IMG/VR virus record: IMGVR_UViG_3300032236_000747
Location: 124,001 to 188,000 of that record
Direction: 5' to 3' (one strand)
DNA: 64,000 bases
The position numbers and the translations under genes are program-made. Shown here piece after piece: positions 3,050 through 40,432 of this stretch; within the stretch, counting starts at the first letter, position 1; every line of letters begins with the position of its first letter. The notes beneath the pieces were generated by a model. The model was given only the letters and a program-made list of their open reading frames with translations, was not told the origin of the DNA and searched no databases.

Positions 3050-3352
3050 TCATATTCCTAGAGAAGATTTTAGTGTGCTTAGTTGAGGTAAAAATATAAC
3101 GGTACCCGGTACCATATCAAAGATAGGATCTTTTATAACAGTTTTATTTCTTACTGCAAATACCCACCATAACTTGGAATCATTGTATAAGTCATTGGCA
3201 AGCAAGTCAGGTCTATTTTCATACTTAGGAGATATAGTAAATGGCACATCACTAACTGTACTAGGAATATCCCTTAGTGTAAGAACATCCATGTAACCGT
3301 TGGTAATAACTGTGGTGTAATAAGGACTAGATTTATTGTAAGCAGCAGTCAT
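3050..3352 (-). CDS. gp53: Baseplate wedge protein, gp53/LysM (tail X)-like
   Basis: 'YENRPDLLANDLYNDSKLWWVFAVRN...DPIFDMVPG' matches the gp53 RPD...YG...WW motif. Confidence 0.8.
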   Translation of the reverse strand: MTAAYNKSSPYYTTVITNGYMDVLTLRDIPSTVSDVPFTISPKYENRPDLLANDLYNDSKLWWVFAVRNKTVIKDPIFDMVPGTVIFLPQLSTLKSSLGI

Positions 3353-8525: not shown

Positions 8526-8822
8526 ATGTATACGGATGACTACGAAAAATTACATCAAGCGTACATAGCAAAGATGGTAGAATACCATAATGCGTATCAT
8601 GCATACATGTACGGCGCTCGCAGCAAGCCTAAAAACTTTGCTATGCGTGTTGTATTGAAGGAACTTTTAAAGTTGAATAAGGCACTAATAGCAGAATCGA
8701 TTGCTGTTAGGAAGAAAAAGATAGAAGCGTATAGCGATACCTATCAAGGACAACGGAAAAATAGCGGAGACGCTAGTAGATTTTACAAAAATGACGTGGA
8801 CACATCAGGGGACAATAGTTGA
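8526..8822 (+). CDS. Small basic helical hypothetical protein
   Basis: 98-aa ORF, co-oriented, overlaps the start of the GIY-YIG gene. Confidence 0.65.
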   Translation: MYTDDYEKLHQAYIAKMVEYHNAYHAYMYGARSKPKNFAMRVVLKELLKLNKALIAESIAVRKKKIEAYSDTYQGQRKNSGDASRFYKNDVDTSGDNS

Positions 8823-9216
8823 AACACTACCAGAGGACTGTGTGGGCTTCGTTTATCTCATTACAAATATGCTGACGGGCAGGAAATACGTAGGCAAAAA
8901 ACTAGCGAAATTCGCGAAAACAACTTATAAAACTAAAACACTTAAAAACGGCACCAAAAAAAGGCAAAAGATTCGCAGCAAGGTAGACAGTGACTGGCAA
9001 GAGTATTACGGTTCTAGTGTAGAACTAACAGCAGATATTGCTAAGTTAGGTAAAGATAACTTTTCAAGAGAGATCCTATACTACTGTAAGAGCAAAGCAG
9101 AAACAAGTTATACTGAAGCAAGAGAACAATTCGATAGAAAAGTTTTAGAATCAACAGATTATTATAACGGACAGATATCTGTTCGTGTACATGGCTCACA
9201 CATTTTAAAGAAGTAA
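8791..9216 (+). CDS. Stand-alone GIY-YIG family nuclease (catalytic domain only)
   Basis: 'GFVYLITN...RKYVGKK...DWQEYYGSS...FSREILYYC...SYTEAREQ...YYN' gives the GIY-YIG hairpin motifs, helical Glu and terminal Asn; no C-terminal DNA-binding domain. Confidence 0.8.
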   Translation: MTWTHQGTIVETLPEDCVGFVYLITNMLTGRKYVGKKLAKFAKTTYKTKTLKNGTKKRQKIRSKVDSDWQEYYGSSVELTADIAKLGKDNFSREILYYCKSKAETSYTEAREQFDRKVLESTDYYNGQISVRVHGSHILKK

Positions 9217-9699: not shown

Positions 9700-10782
9700 A
9701 TGAAGATTTCTCAGTTAGTACAGTTTAGTTTAGACGAAACAACTAAAAATCCCGCAAGAGCTGCTTCTCAGGAAACAGGGCGTAATCTTGCTAGATCTAT
9801 GGCTAGTGGAGGTTTAACTCCAGATCAACTACAAAGATCTATTCAGGGACAACAGTCTAGGCTAGTTAAAACTCCTAACACTGGAGATACTCTAGGACAA
9901 ACAACTCCTCAACAAAGACTAGCTGCACAGAGACAGACTAATGGCGTTGCTCCTGCTGCTCCTGGTACTCAAGTAGTTCCTGCTAATACTCAAGCAGCAC
10001 CCCAAGCTACAAATACTCAAGTAGCTCCTCAAGGTCCAGTTAATCTAGGTGCTGCTACTCCAGATGCTGGAGAAGAAAGACCAGGTAACGACCTTGCTAC
10101 TACTCAAGAACCTGCTGCTGCACCTGCTGAGAAGGGTAAGCTAGCCAAAGCCGGTGATTGGGTCAAAGGTAAACTATCTAATGCTTCTCTACAAGGCGCA
10201 AGTAATCTTATTCAACGTGGTGCTGCTAATGCCAAGGACAACATTCCGGGCATCGCCGGATATGCTAGTGACCTAGTGGGCAACACAGCTCAAGCAGTTG
10301 CTCCGGGTGCTAACAAAGCTATCAGCGCAGTTGGTGACGTAGGTACCAACCTAGCACAAAACGCAAGTAACGTTGCCAGTGCTGTAGGCGGCGGACTAAC
10401 TAAAACTATCGGAGCCACGCTAGGTGGATTTGGTCAAGGCTATCACACAGCACGTCAAGGCAAGAGTTTTAGAGATGCTGCTGGTGGACTACCGGGTGCT
10501 CCTAGACTAGGTGGCCAATACCAAGGTGATCCATATCAAGGTGGAGATACAGGTAACGCAGGTACCCCAACAAGTTCGGGTACAGATCGTCCAGCTAGTG
10601 GCGGTATTGGTGGAGCCATGCGTCAGGCTGCTGGTGTAGGCGGTCAAGGCGGCGGCGAGGGCACTGATGCTATTAGCGATCTAAAAAATAGACTAGGAAG
10701 AGTTGAGAAAGCCATGGGACTAGCTGAATCTAAGAAGCCCCAAGGCACTATGCTTCCTCATGTTAGAAGAAGGGCAGTTTAG
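9700..10782 (+). CDS. Low-complexity Gly/Ala/Gln-rich protein, putative internal head (ejected) protein
   Basis: N-terminus MKISQLVQFSLDE resembles T4 capsid-targeting/gp21-cleaved leaders; late promoter; largely disordered composition. Confidence 0.5.
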   Translation: MKISQLVQFSLDETTKNPARAASQETGRNLARSMASGGLTPDQLQRSIQGQQSRLVKTPNTGDTLGQTTPQQRLAAQRQTNGVAPAAPGTQVVPANTQAAPQATNTQVAPQGPVNLGAATPDAGEERPGNDLATTQEPAAAPAEKGKLAKAGDWVKGKLSNASLQGASNLIQRGAANAKDNIPGIAGYASDLVGNTAQAVAPGANKAISAVGDVGTNLAQNASNVASAVGGGLTKTIGATLGGFGQGYHTARQGKSFRDAAGGLPGAPRLGGQYQGDPYQGGDTGNAGTPTSSGTDRPASGGIGGAMRQAAGVGGQGGGEGTDAISDLKNRLGRVEKAMGLAESKKPQGTMLPHVRRRAV

Positions 10783-10981
10783 TTTCTTTAGTTGTTTCGA
10801 GATTACTGTCGATTATCTTAGAGATAATCTCTCTGTTTTCAAAGTCTAGTTGGAAGGCTTCTTCAAAGGTAAGGCTTCCCCTCATAAACCAACACATTCT
10901 AAAAAGATCTTTCTTTAAGGCTTTTGTATCTGCTTCCATTTCTTTAACTAACTCTTCGATCTCTGGGATCGTCAGACGCAA
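10763..10981 (-). CDS. gp51: Baseplate hub assembly catalyst (gp51-like); possibly made as a -1 frameshift extension of gp26
   Basis: 'LFRMCWFMRGSLTFEEAFQLDFENREIISKII...TKLPFF' gp51-like pattern; weak TTG start; frame is open upstream through the gp26 stop. Confidence 0.7.
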   Translation of the reverse strand: MRLTIPEIEELVKEMEADTKALKKDLFRMCWFMRGSLTFEEAFQLDFENREIISKIIDSNLETTKETKLPFF

Positions 10982-10986
10982 AAGCC

Positions 10987-11850
10987 TTACGCGAAAAAAT
11001 CTGAGTTATTAAAGTTAATAGGAATCTCGTAGGTAGCAGGAGCACCTTCTGCCTGTTGCTCCTCAGTTGTGTTAGCAGTCAATGGTTTTAGTTCATTATG
11101 TTTCTTTAGTTCGTCTAAGTGATTTTTAATTTTATCAAAAACATCTTTGTCACAGTTACCGATAAACTCTTTAATGTGTTTTGCGTCAGTGACTTCTACA
11201 CCAGTTGAAACTATTTTATAAATGCTTTCGCTGATTAGATCTACGGTAACTTGTGTTAAGTTACCGAAGCTACGATTAAACAATTCTAACTTTTGTTCTT
11301 CACTAAGCGAATCATCGTTGACCATGTTCAATATTTTTTGAGTTTCAAAACTTTTTAAACCAATCTGCGTCATGTGTTTATAAGTTAACGGTCTAACAAA
11401 AACAGTCAAATCTTCGGAAATCTGTATTTGCTCATCCCATCCGACTGAAGTTAACTGTTGATCTAACAAATGCCTTAGGTCTAAATCAAACTCCACTTCT
11501 TCAAGGGTTACTGGTATCTTATATTTGATAGGCATCCGATCACCGTATGTAGCAAGACGTATAGCAATAAGAATGCTATCCAAATCAAGAGTAGGGCACG
11601 CCCAGGCATTTTTAATATTTGGAATACAACTTTGTATAACATCGACCATGGCCTGTCCGTTAAGTAACGCATCTGGAGTTTTAAATATTAACTCATCCCT
11701 AGCAGTCATCGAATATACTGGAAAATCTCCAGTCTCGGTCATTTCTAAACTCTTTGGCGCCCAATATGTACCGTTGGTTGGCAACTTCATGTAGATCTTT
11801 GGTTGCCTCATAAAGTTGGCTAATGGGTTTGGTCTTGCTACTGGTTGCAT
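10987..11850 (-). CDS. gp26: Baseplate hub assembly protein (gp26-like)
   Basis: 'NPLANFMRQPKIYMKLPT...VYSMTARDELIFKTPDALLNG...DLDSILIAIRLATYG' gp26 pattern. Confidence 0.8.
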   Translation of the reverse strand: MQPVARPNPLANFMRQPKIYMKLPTNGTYWAPKSLEMTETGDFPVYSMTARDELIFKTPDALLNGQAMVDVIQSCIPNIKNAWACPTLDLDSILIAIRLATYGDRMPIKYKIPVTLEEVEFDLDLRHLLDQQLTSVGWDEQIQISEDLTVFVRPLTYKHMTQIGLKSFETQKILNMVNDDSLSEEQKLELFNRSFGNLTQVTVDLISESIYKIVSTGVEVTDAKHIKEFIGNCDKDVFDKIKNHLDELKKHNELKPLTANTTEEQQAEGAPATYEIPINFNNSDFFA

Positions 11851-11890: not shown

Positions 11891-11898
11891 TATTTATA
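11891..11898 (-). promoter_or_regulatory. Late promoter TATAAATA for gp26
   Basis: tatttata on + strand is the exact T4 late consensus on the - strand. Confidence 0.65.
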
Positions 11899-11923: not shown

Positions 11924-14239
11924 ATGAATCCAGCACAAGAAGCTACACTTGCAGAACTAGTACGTATTGCTGCCACAATGGGCAAAGACATTGAGAAGAT
12001 GCGTAAATGGGCTGAAAAAGACCATTCCACTGCTAATGGAAGTGCTTCATCTGGCGGAACAACAGGAGCCACTGCTACTGCCGCAGCCGAGTTAGGCAAG
12101 TTTAGCAAGATAGCTGCTGCTGCAAACATAGCCGTAAAAGCACTAGAGGTAGGTTTTAACATGGTTTCAAGCGTGTTAGGGGGCTTATCCAGCATTGTCG
12201 GCGGCTTAGTAGGTACAGTATCTAAGACAGCAGAAAACTTAATAAAGTTTGCAATCAGTACAACTAGCGGTACAGCCAAGCTAGCCGACTTCTATGATGC
12301 TTTCCGAGACCTTCCTTCGTTGCTAGGTACGTTTGCAGGATATATTGCAGACATCACTAGATATTTTGAAAATATGTTAGGTGATTATCAGGCAATGTCT
12401 AACTCAGGAGCGAGCTTTAGTGGAAGTTTAGCAAACATGCGTGTAGCCGCTGCCGAAGCACAAATGAGTCTAACTGAATTAAAAAATTCTCTTAATCAAA
12501 ATTCTGAAATATTTTCTAGTCTAGGAGGAAACGTTGAGAACGGCATGCGCAAATTTGTTAGTATGCAAAGTGCGTTGCTTGGTCCTAACAGCACATACTC
12601 TAAAGAACTTCTCGGGCTAGGATATACCACAGAACAAGTATCACAAGGACTTCAAACATATATTAGACTGCAAGGTGACATGAACAAACAAGGCATGCAA
12701 AACACCAAACAAGTTGCTGAAGGTGTAATGAATGTTAATAAAGAACTAGACCTATATGCTAAGGCTACTGGTATCAACAGAGAAAAGTTAGAAGCTGATA
12801 TGAAGAAAGCTTCATTTGACGCTAGTTGGAAGCAGTTTACACAGGGTATGAGTCCAGAAAAAGCTGCTGAAGCTACTCTTGCTGTAAGCAAGGCTCTACA
12901 GACAGGCGGTGAAGGAGCTGCTGATTTACTTAAACAAATGTTTATGACTGGAGGGCGTGTATCCACTCCTATTACTGAAGCTAGTAAAGCATTCTTTATT
13001 CAATCTAATGGTATGGCCGAGCAATATACCAGAGGTATGTATAACTCAACAATGAACATGAAAGCTGGTAGTCAAGAGCAACTTGCTGTTCAGTTAGAAC
13101 TGAATAGGCGATTAGGAGCAGAAGGACAAAAGTTTTATAAACAGTTTGGCGACGGTGCAGCAATATTGAATATGCAGAATCATGCTTTGTTTAAGAGTAA
13201 TGAGTTAATGAACCTAGGACAGAAGACGCAAACTCAAACTGTTGCCAGTGCCAAGATCGCTGCTGCCGAAGCAAAAAGACAACAAGAAGAGCAAAAAAAT
13301 GGATCAGCATCAGCATTTGCTAATGTTCAGCAAGGATTTAAAACTTTTGGAAACGCACTAACTTCTGCGGTAGTTACATTCTTAGAACCATTTGCTACTC
13401 AGTTTGCGCAATGGGGACTTTACGTAGCAAACCTAATGAATGATCCGGAAGTAAAAGATGCCATGAATCAAGCTCGTGTTATGTTAACTGACATTATATC
13501 TTGGCTCGGTGGAGCATTTAAATCTATCTCAGCAGAATTTAAGACTGGAGGATTTACAGCGGCGTTTAACGAAGCTATTAAACAAATAGAAGAAGGACTT
13601 AATGAAGTATGGAAGGTTATAGGTCCTCCTATAATTAGAGTTTGGAACGATGATGTTGTGCCTTTTTTAAAGAAAGCGTTTTCATCATTGTTTGAACTGA
13701 TTTGGGTTGGATTTAAACAATGGCTATTCGGCGGACCATCTGTTGAGGAACTTAAAAGGCAAGGACAAGATAAGAAAGATAAAACGGTAGAATCTAAAAT
13801 GTCTGAAGCTGATTATAAAAATAAAGCAACTGATATTTTAATGGCTGAACGTCCAGGAAAAGAAGGAACTATCACTAATGCTGATATTATGCGTAAAGTT
13901 GAAGAACTTAAAGCTCAGTACAATGGAGCACCTGCTAAATCGGAAGAGGTAAATCCAAGAGAACGCAGGGCTAGTGGCACTTGGGGCATGACCGGGCAGC
14001 TAACTGAGCCCAAAACCACAGTTACTCAAGTCGAAGCAGGCGAAACGGTGCTGACTGCTGAGCAGAGGAACGCCATGCTAGCAGCCATGAACGGAGGCAG
14101 CGGAAATAGTGTAGCAGAGGCTATTAATCGCTTAAATAACTTAACAGCACAGTTGCTTCATCACACCCGCGAAGTTGCTCAACATACTAAACGCAATGTA
14201 GATGCAACTAGGGCATTAAACGGAAACTTATTGGCTTAA
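11924..14239 (+). CDS. Tail tape measure protein
   Basis: 771-aa Ala/Gln/Met-rich helical protein; C-terminal 'RRASGTWGMTGQLTEP...EAGETVLT' motif; next to gp26/gp51-like genes. Confidence 0.75.
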   Translation: MNPAQEATLAELVRIAATMGKDIEKMRKWAEKDHSTANGSASSGGTTGATATAAAELGKFSKIAAAANIAVKALEVGFNMVSSVLGGLSSIVGGLVGTVSKTAENLIKFAISTTSGTAKLADFYDAFRDLPSLLGTFAGYIADITRYFENMLGDYQAMSNSGASFSGSLANMRVAAAEAQMSLTELKNSLNQNSEIFSSLGGNVENGMRKFVSMQSALLGPNSTYSKELLGLGYTTEQVSQGLQTYIRLQGDMNKQGMQNTKQVAEGVMNVNKELDLYAKATGINREKLEADMKKASFDASWKQFTQGMSPEKAAEATLAVSKALQTGGEGAADLLKQMFMTGGRVSTPITEASKAFFIQSNGMAEQYTRGMYNSTMNMKAGSQEQLAVQLELNRRLGAEGQKFYKQFGDGAAILNMQNHALFKSNELMNLGQKTQTQTVASAKIAAAEAKRQQEEQKNGSASAFANVQQGFKTFGNALTSAVVTFLEPFATQFAQWGLYVANLMNDPEVKDAMNQARVMLTDIISWLGGAFKSISAEFKTGGFTAAFNEAIKQIEEGLNEVWKVIGPPIIRVWNDDVVPFLKKAFSSLFELIWVGFKQWLFGGPSVEELKRQGQDKKDKTVESKMSEADYKNKATDILMAERPGKEGTITNADIMRKVEELKAQYNGAPAKSEEVNPRERRASGTWGMTGQLTEPKTTVTQVEAGETVLTAEQRNAMLAAMNGGSGNSVAEAINRLNNLTAQLLHHTREVAQHTKRNVDATRALNGNLLA

Positions 14240-14243
14240 TATT

Positions 14244-15983
14244 ATGGCATGGAAACGTTACTTCACACCTGTTAACAAAACAGGTACCCTTAGTCCTATC
14301 AGTGGCAGTGGCACTGGTAGCAGCCTCGGTGCAGGTGTAGGACGCACTAACTACAGCAGTTATCTTCCTGATGTTTACACAGGACATCCTAACAGACTTG
14401 AACGTTATGGTCAATATGATACTATGGACATGGACAGCGAAGTTAATGCTGCCCTAGATATCTTAGCTGAGTTCTGCACGCAAATAAATGACGAAAATAG
14501 CACACCTTTTCAGGTTGCTTTTAAAGAGCAGGCAACTAGCACAGAAATAAAAATTATTAAAAAATATCTGCAGCAGTGGACTAAACTAAACAAGTTTGAG
14601 AAACGTATCTTTAAAATCGTACGCAACGCTTTTAAGTACGGAGACAGCTTTTTTATCAGAGATCCCGAAGATCAGAGCTGGTTTTACGTTGACCCTAGCA
14701 AGGTAGATAAGATTATTGTCAACGAGTCGGAAGGCAAGCTAGCAGAACAATATGTTGTCCGTGACATCAATGTTAACTTTGAAAACTTAACCACTACTCA
14801 GATCAATCCCACCAATCAAAATATGACTCCGGGCAATGTTGCCTACATCACAGGCGGTGCACAGCAACGTGGCATGGTCGGTGGCAGTTCTCAACAAAAT
14901 GGTAGCCGCTTTGCTACTAACATGAACCAATGGGCCATCGACGCAAAGCACGTTATTCATATCAGTCTAAGTGAAGGTTTAGACAATAATTTCCCATTCG
15001 GCAACAGTTTACTTGAAAGTATTTTTAAAGTATACAAGCAAAAAGAATTGTTAGAAGACGCGATTATTATCTATCGTGTTATGCGTGCGCCCGAGCGCAG
15101 AGTATTTTACATCGACGTAGGTAACATGCCTCCGCACTTGGCCATGGGCTTTGTAGAACGTGTTAAAAACGAAGTTAACCAACGCAGACTACCATCGGTA
15201 GCAGGCGGCAGCAGCAGTGTAGTTGACAGTAGCTATAACCCGTTAAGCATCACTGAAGACTACTACTTCCCTCAAACAGCAGAAGGGCGAGGAAGTAAGA
15301 TTGATACCCTTGCAGGCGGTACAAACCTAGGAGAAATTGATGATCTTCGCTTTTTTACTAATAAGTTGTTTAGGGCTCTACGCATCCCTAGCAGTTATCT
15401 ACCTACTGGTCCCGACGACGGTGGAAGCTCATTTAATGATGGTCGAGTTGGAACAGCCTACATTCAAGAACTTAGATTCAACAAGTACTGTGAACGCTTA
15501 CAAAGTCTAATGAACGAGGTCTTTGACCTACAGTTTAAGATGTATATGAACAAGAAAGGAATCAACATTGATCCTAACTTGTTTGACCTAAAGTTTAACC
15601 CTCCGCAGAACTTTGCGGCATATCGTCAAGCTGAAATGGACGGTGCTAGAGTTAACACATTTACCACTATGGCTGGTATTCCACACATTAGTAAACGCTT
15701 TGCCCTTAAACGCTTCTTAGGCCTGAGCCAAGAAGAGATGGCAGAGAACGAAAAGATGTGGAAAGAAGAAAACGTTGACACTAAAACTAATCTATCTGCC
15801 CAAGCAGAACTACGTAGCGCAGGCGTTACACCTAGCGGTATTAGCGGTGATATTGACGCACTTGGACAAAGTGCTGAACCTCCAGAAGGCATGGGAGAAG
15901 AAGGCATGCCAGGTGCTCCTAGCCCAGTAGATGCAGCCGGGGGCGGAGCAGCTCCGGGTGGTGCGCCAACTGGTGGAATGTAA
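14244..15983 (+). CDS. gp20: Portal vertex protein
   Basis: 'LLEDAIIIYRVMRAPERRVFYIDVGNMPPHLA...EDYYFPQTAEGRGSKIDTLAGGTNLGEIDDLRFFTNKLFRALRIPSSYL'. Confidence 0.97.
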   Translation: MAWKRYFTPVNKTGTLSPISGSGTGSSLGAGVGRTNYSSYLPDVYTGHPNRLERYGQYDTMDMDSEVNAALDILAEFCTQINDENSTPFQVAFKEQATSTEIKIIKKYLQQWTKLNKFEKRIFKIVRNAFKYGDSFFIRDPEDQSWFYVDPSKVDKIIVNESEGKLAEQYVVRDINVNFENLTTTQINPTNQNMTPGNVAYITGGAQQRGMVGGSSQQNGSRFATNMNQWAIDAKHVIHISLSEGLDNNFPFGNSLLESIFKVYKQKELLEDAIIIYRVMRAPERRVFYIDVGNMPPHLAMGFVERVKNEVNQRRLPSVAGGSSSVVDSSYNPLSITEDYYFPQTAEGRGSKIDTLAGGTNLGEIDDLRFFTNKLFRALRIPSSYLPTGPDDGGSSFNDGRVGTAYIQELRFNKYCERLQSLMNEVFDLQFKMYMNKKGINIDPNLFDLKFNPPQNFAAYRQAEMDGARVNTFTTMAGIPHISKRFALKRFLGLSQEEMAENEKMWKEENVDTKTNLSAQAELRSAGVTPSGISGDIDALGQSAEPPEGMGEEGMPGAPSPVDAAGGGAAPGGAPTGGM

Positions 15984-37614: not shown

Positions 37615-37622
37615 TATAAATA
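37615..37622 (+). promoter_or_regulatory. Late promoter TATAAATA
   Basis: Exact consensus; SD aggag and GTG start at 37640. Confidence 0.7.
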
Positions 37623-37639
37623 TCTGATAGGAGATATCA

Positions 37640-40432
37640 GTGGCAGCAATTCAGCAAGATTTTATTGTTAAAAATGGTATGGTGGTCCGTAATACGGCCA
37701 CCTTTTCCGCCACTGACAATATAGTAACTACTGGCACACAAGCAGCAACGGTATTACCAACACTTAATCTAAACTTTGCTGCTTCTAGTATATTAGATCC
37801 TCGTATAAGTTTTAATAGACCCAGCGGCGCTACTTATGTAGGTAAAAATGGTTACATACAATACGCAGCCAATGATGTTCCTAGATTTGACTACGACACA
37901 GTTAATACCGGAACCATTCGGGGTTTATTAATAGAAGAGCCTCGTACAAATCTTGTAATAAATTCAAACTCTATAGGAATCGGCGGATGGAATTATCAAA
38001 CCGGTGCAAATGATTCAGCTTATATTTTTAATGCTGATATAGCACCCGACGGTACCAGAACTGCCACGCTAATCTACGCCACTACAACAACATTAACATA
38101 TCCGAACTTTTTGCAGTACCTCAACGTTAATACTGCTACAACCTATACGGGTTCTTTTTTTGTTAAACCTACTAATGGTAAAGCAACAGTTAGTTGCACA
38201 TTGTATGACGGTGCAACAAATTTAAACTGTTTGTCTATTGTTTATAACTTTTTGACAAATAGTTTTAGCACAAGTACAACTGGAAATACCACTACATTTG
38301 TAGTAATTCCAACAGTTCAACAATATCCTAATGGTTGGTACAGAATACAATCAGGCTGGTCATTTAACAGTGGCCCGACAAGGAATATTCAATATAAATT
38401 AAATCTAGATTCGTCAGGATCGCCTGCAGTTGGATCGGGATTATTGCTTTGGGGTGCGCAGATTGAAGCAGGTACATCTGTTACTAGCCTAATACCTACA
38501 AACACAGTTAGTGCAACTAGGGCAGGTGATTCAGCCAGTATGGTAGGACAAAACTTCTTAAGTTGGTTTACACAAGCTCAAGGAACTGTTTACGCAGAAT
38601 GGTATCAATATACAGGTGGCGGTGGCAACGTTTATACAACTCCGGGAGTTTGGGGAGTTACTGACACTAATCTAGGAGTATACAATGGTTATGGCATTAG
38701 ACTTGACTACGGAACAATCAATGATCAAAACATATCCTTTATATCAAGGCAAGCGTTAAACGGAAATGCTGCACTAACGTTTGGTTATGTAGGCCCAAAA
38801 CTTGGAATAACAACCGGCACATATAAATCGATAGCAGGCTGGGATGTTAATAATCAAAACGTAACTATACAAGGATATAATACCATTACACTTGGTTCTA
38901 ATCCAGCGGCTAAAGTGCTTACACAAATGAATACCTTATTAATAGGAAATCAAAATATTGGAGGTGGCCCTACGCAGATAAACGGTGCCATTCGTAGATT
39001 AATATTTTGGCCTCAACTATTATCCCCTAGCCAGTTTCAGGCTTTAACTACATCAACGGTTTTTCTTGGATCTAATCCAGTCAACTCACAAAGCCCTACA
39101 AGAAATGCCAATACCAGTGATTTTATCGTACAACAAGGTGTGCAGATTAGGGGTAACTTTGAGGTTCCTGATGTCGATAAGTTATATGCAACTACATTAA
39201 CAAGGCCGATACAACAGCCATCGTTAAATCTAAACTTCTTAAAAGGAACATTGGATCCTAGAATACAGTTTACTCGAACCAGCGGTGCTACTTACATAGG
39301 ATCTGACGGATATATCAAATATTCTCCTAATAATACTCCGCGTTTCCAATATAGTTCTACATCAACTGGAACCTGTTTAGGACTTTTAATAGAAGAACAA
39401 CGTACAAATTATTACACATCTAGCACAGATTATTTCCAATCTTTATCAGGAGGATATACCTTTTGGGACGGTAGTTTTGGATTTAGGAATATACTAACAG
39501 GTATTAACACAACTACGGTCTACGCATTATCTCTGCACCTTAAGGTTAATCAATACTATACTGGCCATACTATAATGGTTGATCTAGGAGACGGTCCTAC
39601 AACATTAAACAAGGCATTGTCTACGTTTACTACAGGAACCTGGGTTAGATTTGCAGGTACCGGCCTTTGTGTTAATACAGGACTGTTTGCTGATATAAGA
39701 CTACAAAACCTAGGACCGGGTGTGCTCGCTGCTGGAGTATTTGTTGGTCCTCCTGGTACAACAACTCCTATGACACGCAACTACGGTGTTTCTCCGGACG
39801 GTAATAGAACTTCTACTAGGATTATTGTTAATAATACACAAACTGGTGCCCTGATGACTGATATAGAACTTTGGGGATTCCAAGTAGAGCCCGGACAATA
39901 CTCCACTAGTTTCATACCCACCGGGTCTGGTTCAGTAACCAGGGCTGCTGATGCTGCGGTTATATCTGGACAAAACTTTTTAAACTGGTATAATCCTAAA
40001 CAAGGTACTATCTATACAGAAGGCGCAGTTAGTCCGGGATTTTCAGGATTTAGTCCTATATTAACCATAGAAGACGGTCCAGGTAATAATGTAGTGGGTA
40101 TGTATCAATATACAGGATTATTCGGAGCAACAATTAGATGGGGATCAGGCACACAACTAGGAGACCCGTTGGCTAGTATTTCTGGGGGTTCTGTAACAGG
40201 AACAAACTTTAAACTAGCTACTACTGTTGCTGCAGGCAACTATTATTCTATATGGAACAGCGTAGTTGGTAGCTCAACAACCGATCAACGTGTTCCTACA
40301 AGTGTTGACCGTATGCTTATAGGTGCCAGCAACAGCGGATATTTAAATTCTACGTTGAAACGTATCGTCTATTATCCAGAACAACTGTCAACATCAACTC
40401 TGCAGATTCTTACTACTGCTTCAATCTACTAA
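37640..40432 (+). CDS. Fibre-associated carbohydrate-binding-like protein with two tandem domains (930 aa)
   Basis: Two copies of 'P.LNLNF....LDPRI.F.R.SGATY.G..GYI.Y.....PRF.Y...T....GLLIEE.RTN...LWG.Q.E.G...TS.IPT...TRA.D'. Confidence 0.7.
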   Translation: MAAIQQDFIVKNGMVVRNTATFSATDNIVTTGTQAATVLPTLNLNFAASSILDPRISFNRPSGATYVGKNGYIQYAANDVPRFDYDTVNTGTIRGLLIEEPRTNLVINSNSIGIGGWNYQTGANDSAYIFNADIAPDGTRTATLIYATTTTLTYPNFLQYLNVNTATTYTGSFFVKPTNGKATVSCTLYDGATNLNCLSIVYNFLTNSFSTSTTGNTTTFVVIPTVQQYPNGWYRIQSGWSFNSGPTRNIQYKLNLDSSGSPAVGSGLLLWGAQIEAGTSVTSLIPTNTVSATRAGDSASMVGQNFLSWFTQAQGTVYAEWYQYTGGGGNVYTTPGVWGVTDTNLGVYNGYGIRLDYGTINDQNISFISRQALNGNAALTFGYVGPKLGITTGTYKSIAGWDVNNQNVTIQGYNTITLGSNPAAKVLTQMNTLLIGNQNIGGGPTQINGAIRRLIFWPQLLSPSQFQALTTSTVFLGSNPVNSQSPTRNANTSDFIVQQGVQIRGNFEVPDVDKLYATTLTRPIQQPSLNLNFLKGTLDPRIQFTRTSGATYIGSDGYIKYSPNNTPRFQYSSTSTGTCLGLLIEEQRTNYYTSSTDYFQSLSGGYTFWDGSFGFRNILTGINTTTVYALSLHLKVNQYYTGHTIMVDLGDGPTTLNKALSTFTTGTWVRFAGTGLCVNTGLFADIRLQNLGPGVLAAGVFVGPPGTTTPMTRNYGVSPDGNRTSTRIIVNNTQTGALMTDIELWGFQVEPGQYSTSFIPTGSGSVTRAADAAVISGQNFLNWYNPKQGTIYTEGAVSPGFSGFSPILTIEDGPGNNVVGMYQYTGLFGATIRWGSGTQLGDPLASISGGSVTGTNFKLATTVAAGNYYSIWNSVVGSSTTDQRVPTSVDRMLIGASNSGYLNSTLKRIVYYPEQLSTSTLQILTTASIY

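What the first reader, a model, noticed from the sequence alone, without database searches (positions are those of the whole stretch)
10763..11010. Programmed -1 ribosomal frameshift candidate fusing gp26 to gp51 (lambda G/GT-type tail chaperone in a T4-like phage)
Seen: gp26 ends ...TCA GAT TTT TTC GCG TAA (- strand). T_TTT_TTC (10999-10993) is a canonical X_XXY_YYZ slippery heptamer in the correct frame, one codon before the stop. The -1 frame continues TTT CGC GTA AGG CTT TTG CGT CTG..., which is exactly the frame of the gp51-like ORF; that ORF otherwise has only a TTG start with a poorly spaced SD. The predicted fusion is ...NNSDFF-RVRL-LRLTIPEIEE..., 362 aa. Known: most long-tailed phages make two tail-assembly chaperones (lambda gpG/gpGT) by such a frameshift next to the tape measure gene, and here the tape measure gene is the divergent neighbour. 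Inference: gp26/gp51-like proteins of this lineage are G/GT equivalents, which I do not recall being described for T4-like phages.
Basis: partly seen in the sequence, partly recalled or inferred. Interest (0 to 1): 0.85.

Follow-up and report, generated by a model that had tools for sequence, protein, structure and literature searches.

The report
Conserved -1 frameshift in gp26 hub gene
A giant T4-related phage very probably makes a short and a long form of its baseplate-hub assembly protein from one gene by a programmed backward ribosome slip; the signal is conserved but unannotated in every relative examined, and the two forms mirror the separate gp26 and gp51 genes of phage T4.

Summary
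The gp26-type gene (10987-11850, minus strand; Pfam PF12322) ends GAT TTT TTC GCG TAA. The heptamer T_TTT_TTC (10999-10993) is in the zero frame, and the 72-codon ORF downstream is in the -1 frame.

Comparative evidence for a programmed -1 frameshift is very strong:
- All 90 distinct homologous junctions carry the in-frame heptamer. They include Atu_ph07, PA5oct, 121Q, RaK2, GAP32, SCTP-2 and XacN1.
- The third base before the heptamer is always T, although seven different codons occur there.
- The -1 peptide FF-R-x-R-L-L is conserved upstream of any start codon, and 19 of 90 junctions have no start codon.
- A stem starts 3-6 nt after the heptamer and shows compensatory base changes.
- A sister lineage encodes the long form as one in-frame ORF beside a short paralog. 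In four of five such loci that paralog has no slippery heptamer.

T4 gp51 is itself a gp26-like core plus a C-terminal domain. The 362-aa frameshift product therefore has the gp51 architecture, and the 287-aa product has the gp26 architecture.

The lambda G/GT comparison holds as logic only. Gene position differs, no sequence-family similarity was found, and a fold search of the short form against PDB found none.

No inspected record and no searchable paper reports this site. No experiment was possible.

The parts
10987..11850 (-). Zero-frame gene for the short form (287 aa), a gp26-type baseplate-hub assembly protein
   Evidence: ORF. Pfam PF12322 T4_baseplate E 2.8e-14. PHROG 150 'baseplate hub' E 7.5e-14. 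4441 homologs of 273-297 aa. AF2 model pLDDT 84.
10993..10999 (-). Slippery heptamer T_TTT_TTC (X_XXY_YYZ) in the zero frame, over codons GAT-TTT-TTC (D284 F285 F286)
   Evidence: Present in 90 of 90 distinct homologous junctions. The T run, C19 and G20 form the only invariant block of alignment A6; the other invariant columns are isolated.
10987..10989 (-). Zero-frame stop TAA, one codon after the heptamer, lying inside the base of the stem
   Evidence: In relatives the stop lies 1-10 codons after the heptamer.
10973..10989 (-). 5' arm of the stimulatory stem. The conserved, covarying part is 10986-10974 and starts 6 nt after the heptamer.
   Evidence: strand folding: MFE -22.1 kcal/mol, z -3.04. 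The count of structure pairs: 83.5% of cells paired against 33-57% when slid, covariation 0.205 against 0.035-0.087.
10916..10932 (-). 3' arm of the stem (...CAGAUACAAAAGCCUUA). The conserved part is 10931-10919, which also encodes S/T-K-A of the extension.
10763..10999 (-). -1 frame extension: 78 codons from the heptamer (FF + 76 new residues) plus stop 10765-10763. With residues 1-286 it gives the 362-aa long form.
   Evidence: The family has 128 close hits and 468 profile hits. The same domain forms the C-terminus of single-ORF long forms of 319-351 aa.
11891..11898 (-). T4-type late-promoter motif TATAAATA about 40 nt upstream of the gp26 ATG, followed by GAGGA 7 nt before the ATG. No comparable signal precedes the 72-codon ORF.
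   Evidence: The motif count in the window is not above chance, so only its position is suggestive.
11924..14239 (+). Divergent neighbour: 771-aa candidate tape-measure protein (context)
   Evidence: No Pfam, PHROG or NCBIfam hit and no BLASTP similarity to T4 gp29. Nearest Atlas clusters include 'minor tail protein' and 'tape measure' (0.94-0.96). The RaK2 ortholog carries a note of similarity to a tape measure protein. PA5oct and CBB orthologs are virion proteins by MS.

Best explanation
This is a programmed -1 ribosomal frameshift site at the 3' end of the gp26-type hub-assembly gene. Most ribosomes read GAT TTT TTC GCG TAA and release a 287-aa protein. In a fraction of ribosomes, the two tRNA-Phe on UUU (P site) and UUC (A site) slip back one base onto UUU UUU. 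The slip is helped by an RNA stem whose conserved G+C base sits 6 nt after the heptamer. Those ribosomes then read CGC GUA AGG CUU UUG..., pass the UAA stop and add 76 residues, giving a 362-aa protein. The long form has the architecture of T4 gp51 (PF12322 core plus a small helical C-terminal domain). The short form has the architecture of T4 gp26. One gene therefore supplies, at a fixed ratio, the two related hub-assembly proteins that T4 and a sister lineage of these jumbo phages encode as two genes. Shown here: the signal, its conservation, the RNA covariation, and the existence of natural in-frame long forms. Inferred: that slippage occurs, its efficiency, and that the pair acts on hub or tape-measure assembly as lambda G/GT does on the tape measure.
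For: (1) Heptamer. It is present in the same register in 16 of 16 IMG/VR loci at 38-100% protein identity. It is also present in Atu_ph07, Phosso, PA5oct, 121Q, RaK2, GAP32, CBB and SCTP-2 (XacN1 has T_TTT_TTT) at 25-35% identity, and in 79 of 79 further loci. That makes 90 of 90 distinct junctions.
(2) Synonymous-site signature. The codon supplying the first T is GAT, ACT, AAT, AGT, CAT, CGT or GCT, so it always ends in T, while the codon before it varies freely at its third base.
(3) Frame switch at the heptamer. The base after the heptamer is G in 88 of 90 junctions, which keeps Arg (CGN) in the -1 frame, while the zero-frame residue varies over 18 codons. The -1 frame is closed 0-9 codons upstream of the heptamer.
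(4) Start codons. Nineteen of 90 junctions have no ATG, GTG or TTG within 12 codons, and 11 have none within 30. RaK2 and PA5oct annotators called no downstream gene.
(5) RNA. The helix of A6 columns 26-39 with 80-93 is 83.5% paired against 33-57% when slid. Pair 34/85 reads AU 37, UA 22, UG 6, CG 4, and pair 35/84 reads CG 37, AU 16, UA 4. None of 500 shuffles reached the observed value. At least 8 of the 13 pairs checked are in the MFE of 68 of 76 sequences, and the other 8 pair the same 5' arm with a nearer 3' arm. Atu_ph07 has z -6.7 and XacN1 z -3.0. The window has z -3.0.
(6) Natural in-frame long forms of 319-351 aa have the junction xF-R-x-K/R-L/I-I, which aligns with the trans-frame FF|R-x-R-L-L. 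One is identical on three independent contigs. As a tblastn query, such a protein hits Atu_ph07 and Phosso as two pieces (core and extension) joined into one place.
(7) Natural control. In five two-gene loci the short paralog ends with TTC TTT, TTC ATT or TTC TTG. The one that has TTT TTC runs into a -1 stop after one codon.
(8) U_UU.U_UU.C belongs to the efficient H_HH.U_UU.Y class in E. coli and is used by IS elements (PMC4066793).
Against: There is no protein, ribosome-profiling or reporter evidence, so the efficiency is unknown. RNAalifold predicted no consensus structure on alignment A6, so the helix was named by me and then tested. In the window the stem has a C-A mismatch, and a 70-nt fold that cut off the 3' arm gave z 0.0. 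In RaK2, 121Q and GAP32 the downstream structure is weak (z -0.6 to -0.9). About 80% of junctions do have a TTG or ATG near the start of the -1 ORF, so some independent initiation cannot be excluded. Both stem arms are coding, so part of their conservation is a protein constraint.
Confidence: 0.88

Rival explanations
1. The 72-codon ORF is a separate small gene. It is translated from its own TTG (10981-10979), or by termination-reinitiation after the gp26 stop, and no fusion protein is made.
For: TTG lies 5 nt after the stop, with AAGG 3 nt upstream. Seventy-one of 90 junctions have ATG, GTG or TTG at codon 3-6 after the heptamer, and 18 of those are an ATG overlapping a TGA stop (ATGA), a common coupling arrangement. 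Gene callers predict it as a 58-75-aa protein.
Against: Nineteen of 90 junctions have no start codon within 12 codons. Residues upstream of the putative start are conserved in the -1 frame. This model does not explain the synonymous conservation of the heptamer. The candidate start lies inside the conserved stem. The SD spacing is 3 nt. The domain occurs as the C-terminus of single-ORF long forms.
Confidence: 0.07
2. The frame change is made by RNA polymerase slipping on the T6 run, so a subset of mRNAs carries an extra U, and not by the ribosome.
For: A homopolymer run is present. Transcriptional slippage yields two-product genes in some bacteria and IS elements (PMC5009743).
Against: The run is only six T (seven in XacN1) and is never longer in 90 lineages. 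From my own knowledge, efficient slippage usually needs about 8-9 identical bases or more. The run keeps the exact X_XXY_YYZ register and is followed at 3-6 nt by a covarying stem, which is the hallmark of ribosomal -1 frameshifting.
Confidence: 0.03
3. The arrangement is an accident: a sequencing or assembly indel in a homopolymer, or a decaying gene.
For: Homopolymer indels are common. The unverified CMSTMSU record has T5 instead of T6 at this place.
Against: The same arrangement appears in 90 distinct junctions from independent metagenomes and from cultured, viable phages. Both frames are under purifying selection.
Confidence: 0.01

Closest known systems
Lambda gpG/gpGT and the conserved -1 frameshift of tail assembly chaperones (P2 E/E' and others; Xu, Hendrix and Duda 2004, as summarised in PMC5009743)
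   Same: Two products with a common N-terminal part are made from a late tail-morphogenesis gene by a -1 slip near its 3' end. The gene lies next to a candidate tape-measure gene. T4 gp26 and gp51 are listed as hub-assembly chaperones (PMC3004832). The gp26 homolog is not among the virion proteins listed for CBB, and the PA5oct record gives it no MS note.
   Different: The protein family is unrelated (PF12322), and the short form is 287 aa, not about 100-150 aa. The gene is divergent from the tape-measure candidate and not between the tube and tape-measure genes. The heptamer is U_UUU_UUC with a strong downstream stem. The short-form model has no fold match to any PDB entry. Binding to the tape measure or tube has not been tested.
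T4 gp26 (208 aa) and gp51 (249 aa), with the internal-start product 26'
   Same: Both T4 proteins hit PF12322 and PHROG 150. gp51 equals that core plus a C-terminal domain (PF28602), which is the short/long relation produced here by frameshifting. T4 gene 26 also gives two products (26 and 26').
   Different: In T4 these are two separate, divergently transcribed genes with no frameshift. In a quick tree the T4 pair groups together, apart from all jumbo-type cores (SH-aLRT 99, on long branches), so the duplication may be independent. Homology of the two C-terminal domains is only suggested.
E. coli dnaX (tau/gamma) and IS3/IS911 transposase -1 frameshift signals
   Same: Each has a tandem-slippage heptamer plus a downstream stem or pseudoknot a few nucleotides away. 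U_UU.U_UU.C is among the motifs found in IS elements.
   Different: No upstream Shine-Dalgarno-like stimulator is visible here. The frameshift extends the protein, whereas in dnaX it truncates it. The stem is long-range, with a loop of about 40 nt.
Two-gene sister lineage of uncultured jumbo phages (loci L028, L032, L113-L115)
   Same: In four of the five loci the synteny is the same: portal, then a 765-824-aa protein, then, divergently, the hub genes. The short core is the same, and so is the extension domain.
   Different: Short (287-312 aa) and long (320-359 aa, with a four-Cys motif) forms are separate tandem genes, and the slippery heptamer is not maintained.

Membership tests
Programmed -1 ribosomal frameshift site | X_XXY_YYZ heptamer in the zero frame of the upstream ORF | tested here: met
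   T_TTT_TTC at 10999-10993; 90 of 90 homologous junctions.
Programmed -1 ribosomal frameshift site | The -1 frame is open from the heptamer onwards, is coding, and is conserved as protein across the overlap | tested here: met
   The -1 ORF runs 72-81 codons from the heptamer and is closed 0-9 codons upstream. FF-R-x-R-L-L is conserved. Arg CGN follows the heptamer in 88 of 90 junctions.
Programmed -1 ribosomal frameshift site | The heptamer is conserved at synonymous positions in homologs and relaxed where it is not needed | tested here: met
   NNT TTT TTC in 89 of 90 junctions (XacN1 has TTT TTT), with 7 different NNT codons. It is absent in 4 of 5 two-gene loci, and the fifth has a -1 stop after one codon.
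Programmed -1 ribosomal frameshift site | Stimulatory RNA structure about 5-9 nt downstream | tested here: met
   The conserved helix starts 6 nt after the heptamer and shows covariation. It is in the MFE of 68 of 76 sequences. The window has z -3.0. It is weak in the RaK2/121Q/GAP32 group, and RNAalifold did not find it de novo.
Programmed -1 ribosomal frameshift site | Trans-frame protein is made; efficiency is measurable and depends on the heptamer | not testable with these tools
   No proteomic or reporter data are available. Published jumbo-phage papers do not mention it.
Lambda G/GT-type tail assembly chaperone pair | Located between the major tail or tube gene and the tape-measure gene, on the same strand | tested here: not met
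   The gene is divergent from the 771-aa candidate tape measure, and its downstream neighbours are unrelated.
Lambda G/GT-type tail assembly chaperone pair | Sequence or fold similarity to known chaperone families | tested here: not met
   Pfam, PHROGs and NCBIfam return only PF12322 / 'baseplate hub'. Foldseek against PDB gave a best E of 1.1 for the short form. The PDB sequence-profile search found nothing. The long-form model could not be searched because it was lost on the server.
Lambda G/GT-type tail assembly chaperone pair | The common part binds the tape measure, the extension binds the tube protein, and both are absent from virions | not testable with these tools
   Indirect only: the gp26 homolog is absent from the CBB virion MS list shown, while the neighbour CBB_251 is present with 29 peptides. 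PA5oct 0147 carries no MS note, while 0148 does.
T4 gp26 family (Pfam PF12322 T4_baseplate / PHROG 150) | Significant match to the family profile | tested here: met
   E 2.8e-14, 53.8 bits against a cut-off of 24.5. PHROG 150 E 7.5e-14.
T4 gp51 architecture (PF12322 core + Gp51_C) | C-terminal domain homologous to Gp51_C (PF28602) | tested here: inconclusive
   PF28602 is not in the local Pfam copy. Long forms against the gp51 family: E 9.2e-5, probability 59%, aligned to both C-termini. Extension alone: probability 3-4%. Atlas: the only Pfam family near the extension is Gp51_C, at score 0.89.

The most novel reading that the evidence does not exclude
PF12322 proteins would be the T4-superfamily counterpart of the G/GT tail-assembly chaperone pair. 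A short and a C-terminally extended form would both be required at a set ratio for hub and tape-measure assembly. The pair would be produced by -1 frameshifting in the RaK2/121Q/PA5oct/Atu_ph07-type jumbo phages, and by two paralogous genes (gp26 and gp51) in T4 and in a sister jumbo lineage. This would remove T4 as the stated exception to the conserved tail-gene frameshift (PMC5009743) and give the long-obscure gp51 a defined role.
Probability: 0.35. Interest if true: 0.8.

Novelty: new variant of a known kind. Interest (0 to 1): 0.72.

Why it matters
Three reasons.

First, annotation. Every cultured member of a large jumbo-phage group carries this signal, including candidate therapeutic phages of E. 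coli, Klebsiella and Pseudomonas. None of the ten records inspected annotates a joined CDS, and two annotate nothing downstream.

Second, T4 biology. A standard review describes the tail-gene frameshift as conserved in long-tailed phages 'except T4'. The roles of gp26 and gp51 are still unclear. A frameshift-linked short/long pair of the same protein family, matched by two-gene versions, gives a testable model: both forms are needed, in a fixed ratio.

Third, recoding. This is a clean bacterial example of U_UUU_UUC with a covarying long-range stem. About 90 natural variants are available to relate structure to efficiency.

Tried and rejected
- Extension family against T4 gp51 and T4 gp26 as single sequences: not significant (hhalign probability 4% and 0.3%).
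- Pfam, PHROGs and NCBIfam on the extension alone: nothing meaningful.
- Rfam on 10700-11200: no relevant family.
- RNAalifold on the 76-sequence alignment: no consensus pairs. The helix was therefore named by hand from single-sequence folds and tested with pair counts and slid controls.
- First folds with a 70-nt window cut off the 3' arm and gave z 0.0 for the window.
- Foldseek of the short-form model against PDB: no match.
- Foldseek of the long-form model, and of either model against BFVD: could not be run because the models were lost on the server.
- PDB sequence-profile search with the long forms: nothing.
- 771-aa neighbour against T4 gp29: no similarity.
- tblastn with T4 gp51 and with a long form did not reach cyanophages. 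Whether cyanophage gp26/'gp51' pairs use the same device was therefore not tested.
- One profile hit, P0324 (2476 aa, 8 stretches), is a Listeria-Bacteroides repeat protein and was dismissed as spurious.
- An upstream Shine-Dalgarno-like stimulator was looked for by eye and not seen.
Full report
**What is at the coordinates.**
On the minus strand, ORF 10987-11850 (287 aa) ends ...AAT AAC TCA GAT TTT TTC GCG TAA. It belongs to the T4 gp26 family (Pfam PF12322, E 2.8e-14; PHROG 150 'baseplate hub'). T_TTT_TTC lies at 10999-10993 in the zero frame.

The gene has a T4-type late-promoter motif (TATAAATA, 11898-11891) and a GAGGA ribosome-binding site upstream. The small ORF has only AAGG 3 nt before its TTG.

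The window is part of a 354,680-bp IMG/VR contig. The neighbours are a divergent 771-aa protein followed by a T4-type portal (E 7e-109) on one side. On the other side lies a gp46-like nuclease subunit about 2 kb beyond the small ORF, past several other ORFs.

**Is it more than chance?**
Within the window alone, no. Four in-frame T_TTT_TTY occur in 19,424 codons.

Across relatives, yes:
- All 16 loci from a first IMG/VR scan (38-100% identity) have the heptamer in the same register, with the downstream ORF in the -1 frame.
- So do the cultured jumbo myoviruses that tblastn finds at 25-35% identity. These are Atu_ph07, Phosso, PA5oct, 121Q, RaK2, GAP32, CBB and SCTP-2, plus XacN1, which has T_TTT_TTT.
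- So do 79 of 79 evaluable loci from a second scan.
- In total, 90 of 90 distinct junctions have it.

The codon that supplies the first T is GAT, ACT, AAT, AGT, CAT, CGT or GCT. The amino acid changes, but the third base never does. The preceding codon varies freely at its third position.

The base after the heptamer is G in 88 of 90 junctions. This keeps Arg (CGN) in the -1 frame, while the zero-frame codon takes 18 forms. The reading frame under selection therefore changes at the heptamer.

The -1 frame is closed 0-9 codons upstream of the heptamer, and the zero-frame stop lies 1-10 codons downstream.

**Independent start?**
Nineteen of 90 junctions have no ATG, GTG or TTG within 12 codons of the heptamer, and 11 have none within 30. 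RaK2 and PA5oct annotators called no gene there at all. The conserved peptide FF-R-x-R-L-L precedes the candidate starts. Independent initiation cannot be excluded where a TTG or an ATGA overlap exists, but it cannot explain the family.

**RNA structure.**
Single-sequence folds showed a stem starting 3-7 nt after the heptamer. In the window's clade its 5' arm (GGCUUUUG...) pairs with ...CAAAAGCC about 60 nt downstream.

On a gapless 76-sequence alignment (A6), the named helix (columns 26-39 with 80-93) gave these results:

| Measure | Named helix | Control |
|---|---|---|
| Cells paired | 83.5% | 33-57% when the partner is slid |
| Covariation score | 0.205 | 0.035-0.087 when slid |
| Shuffles reaching the observed value | 0 of 500 | - |

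Two positions carry many double changes: AU 37, UA 22, CG 4 at one, and CG 37, AU 16, UA 4 at the other.

At least 8 of the 13 pairs checked are in the MFE of 68 of 76 sequences, with a median pair probability of 0.91. The other eight sequences pair the same 5' arm with a nearer 3' arm.

In the window the stem spans 10989-10973 and 10932-10916 (-22.1 kcal/mol, z -3.0).

Caveats:
- RNAalifold found no consensus.
- Both arms are coding.
- The structure is weak in the RaK2/121Q/GAP32 group.
- No Rfam family matches.

U_UU.U_UU.C belongs to the efficient class of heptamers in E. coli (PMC4066793).

**Natural fusions and a natural control.**
A profile of the extension found 468 proteins. Most are 58-98 aa, but about 20 cluster representatives are 319-351 aa. 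These carry a PF12322 core followed in frame by the extension. Their junction, xF-R-x-K/R-L/I-I, aligns with the trans-frame FF|R-x-R-L-L.

One such protein is encoded identically on three independent contigs. Used as a tblastn query, a long form hits Atu_ph07 and Phosso as two pieces (core and extension) joined into one place.

In the lineage that has these long genes, each long gene is preceded by a short PF12322 paralog of 287-312 aa. In most of these loci the portal and large-protein synteny is the same as in the window.

The short paralogs end in ...NFF...DFF...SSF or ...SNF. Their codons there are TTC TTT, TTC ATT or TTC TTG. The single case with TTT TTC meets a -1 stop after one codon. 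Where a separate long gene exists, the slippery site is not kept.

**Relation to T4.**
In T4, gene 26 is followed by gene 25, and gene 51 is divergent.

However, T4 gp51 residues 1-201 match PF12322 at E 3.9e-52. Its homologs carry PF12322 plus PF28602 (Gp51_C). gp26 and gp51 share PHROG 150. So gp51 is a gp26-like core with an added C-terminal domain.

Evidence on whether the extension matches that domain:
- The long forms align with the gp51 family over their whole length, including the C-termini (E 9.2e-5, probability 59%).
- The extension alone is not significant, though it aligns in the same register.
- The only Pfam family among the extension's nearest Atlas clusters is Gp51_C (score 0.89, a lead only).

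A quick tree places the window-type cores with the short paralogs (SH-aLRT 92). It places T4 gp26 and gp51 together on long branches. The history of duplication against frameshifting is therefore unresolved.

**Function.**
T4 gp26 and gp51 are listed as hub-assembly chaperones of unknown mechanism (PMC3004832).

The 771-aa neighbour is plausibly the tape measure:
- Its Atlas neighbours include 'tape measure' and 'minor tail protein' clusters.
- The RaK2 ortholog carries a curator's note of similarity to a tape measure protein.
- The PA5oct and CBB orthologs are virion proteins by MS.
- At 771-798 aa it is in rough proportion to a 136-nm tail, judged against T4 gp29 (590 aa). The T4 tail length used for that comparison is from my own knowledge.

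Nothing establishes this, however. No family profile matches, and there is no similarity to gp29.

The AF2 models are confident: short form pLDDT 84, and a natural long form pLDDT 90.7 with pTM 0.87, in which the extension forms four helices. The short form has no PDB fold match.

The resemblance to lambda G/GT is therefore one of logic: two nested products at a fixed ratio, next to the tape-measure candidate. It is not one of family.

**Novelty.**
None of the ten inspected GenBank or RefSeq records annotates a joined CDS. Full-text searches that combined frameshifting with these phages or with 'baseplate hub' found nothing describing it. Neither did the CBB, phAPEC6 and PA5oct papers. The searchable library omits most subscription journals.

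A major review states that the tail-gene frameshift is conserved in long-tailed phages 'except T4' (PMC5009743).

**Verdict.**
- This is a real, deeply conserved and so far unannotated -1 frameshift signal in a new gene family (confidence about 0.88).
- The long product is gp51-like in architecture.
- The G/GT-like role is a reasonable but untested inference.

Noticed in passing
L032:3818-6709; L114:1-481; also the NCBI contig: The T4-type portal genes of the two-gene sister lineage carry an intein (PF14890, plus a faint HNH hit), giving products of 961-1015 aa. The window's portal (14244-15983, 579 aa) has none.
   Followed up: no
window 10763-10782: The extension ORF and the convergent plus-strand ORF 9700-10782 overlap by 20 nt at their 3' ends. 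The plus-strand ORF is 360 aa, rich in Gly, Ala and Gln, and has no Pfam or PHROG hit.
   Followed up: no
window 10766-10777 and 10990-10998: Both isoforms end in a Phe-Phe motif: the short form in ...SDFFA and the long form in ...KLPFF. Most long forms also end in a hydrophobic pair after Pro (PFF, PII, PIL). This may be a shared C-terminal docking motif. T4 gp26 ends ...EFFELL.
   Followed up: partly
L027 (MH494197.1, Escherichia phage CMSTMSU, UNVERIFIED) about 3300-3348: This record has five T instead of six at the frameshift site, and its gp26 homolog is split into two CDS further upstream. This is most likely homopolymer sequencing error in a low-quality record.
   Followed up: partly
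MT409116.1 (Acinetobacter phage Octan) 119583-120332: The T4 gp51 homolog of this phage is annotated 'tape measure protein assembly chaperone'. I found no paper that justifies this name, but it matches the functional idea tested here.
   Followed up: partly
window 8791-9216 (+): A 141-aa ORF contains a GIY-YIG-like motif (...YLITN...GRKYVGKK...), which suggests a Seg-type homing endonuclease. SegE_GIY-YIG genes also lie near the hub genes in L032 and L115.
   Followed up: no
window 11891-11898 (-): The T4 late-promoter consensus TATAAATA sits about 40 nt upstream of the gp26 ATG. It occurs only four times in the window, which is fewer than in shuffles. At least one other site (37615-37622, 18 nt before the plus-strand ORF starting at 37640) also lies just upstream of a long ORF.
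   Followed up: partly
P0324 (profile hit): A 2476-aa protein matched the extension profile in eight stretches. It is a Listeria-Bacteroides repeat / dockerin protein, so the match is taken as spurious.
   Followed up: yes
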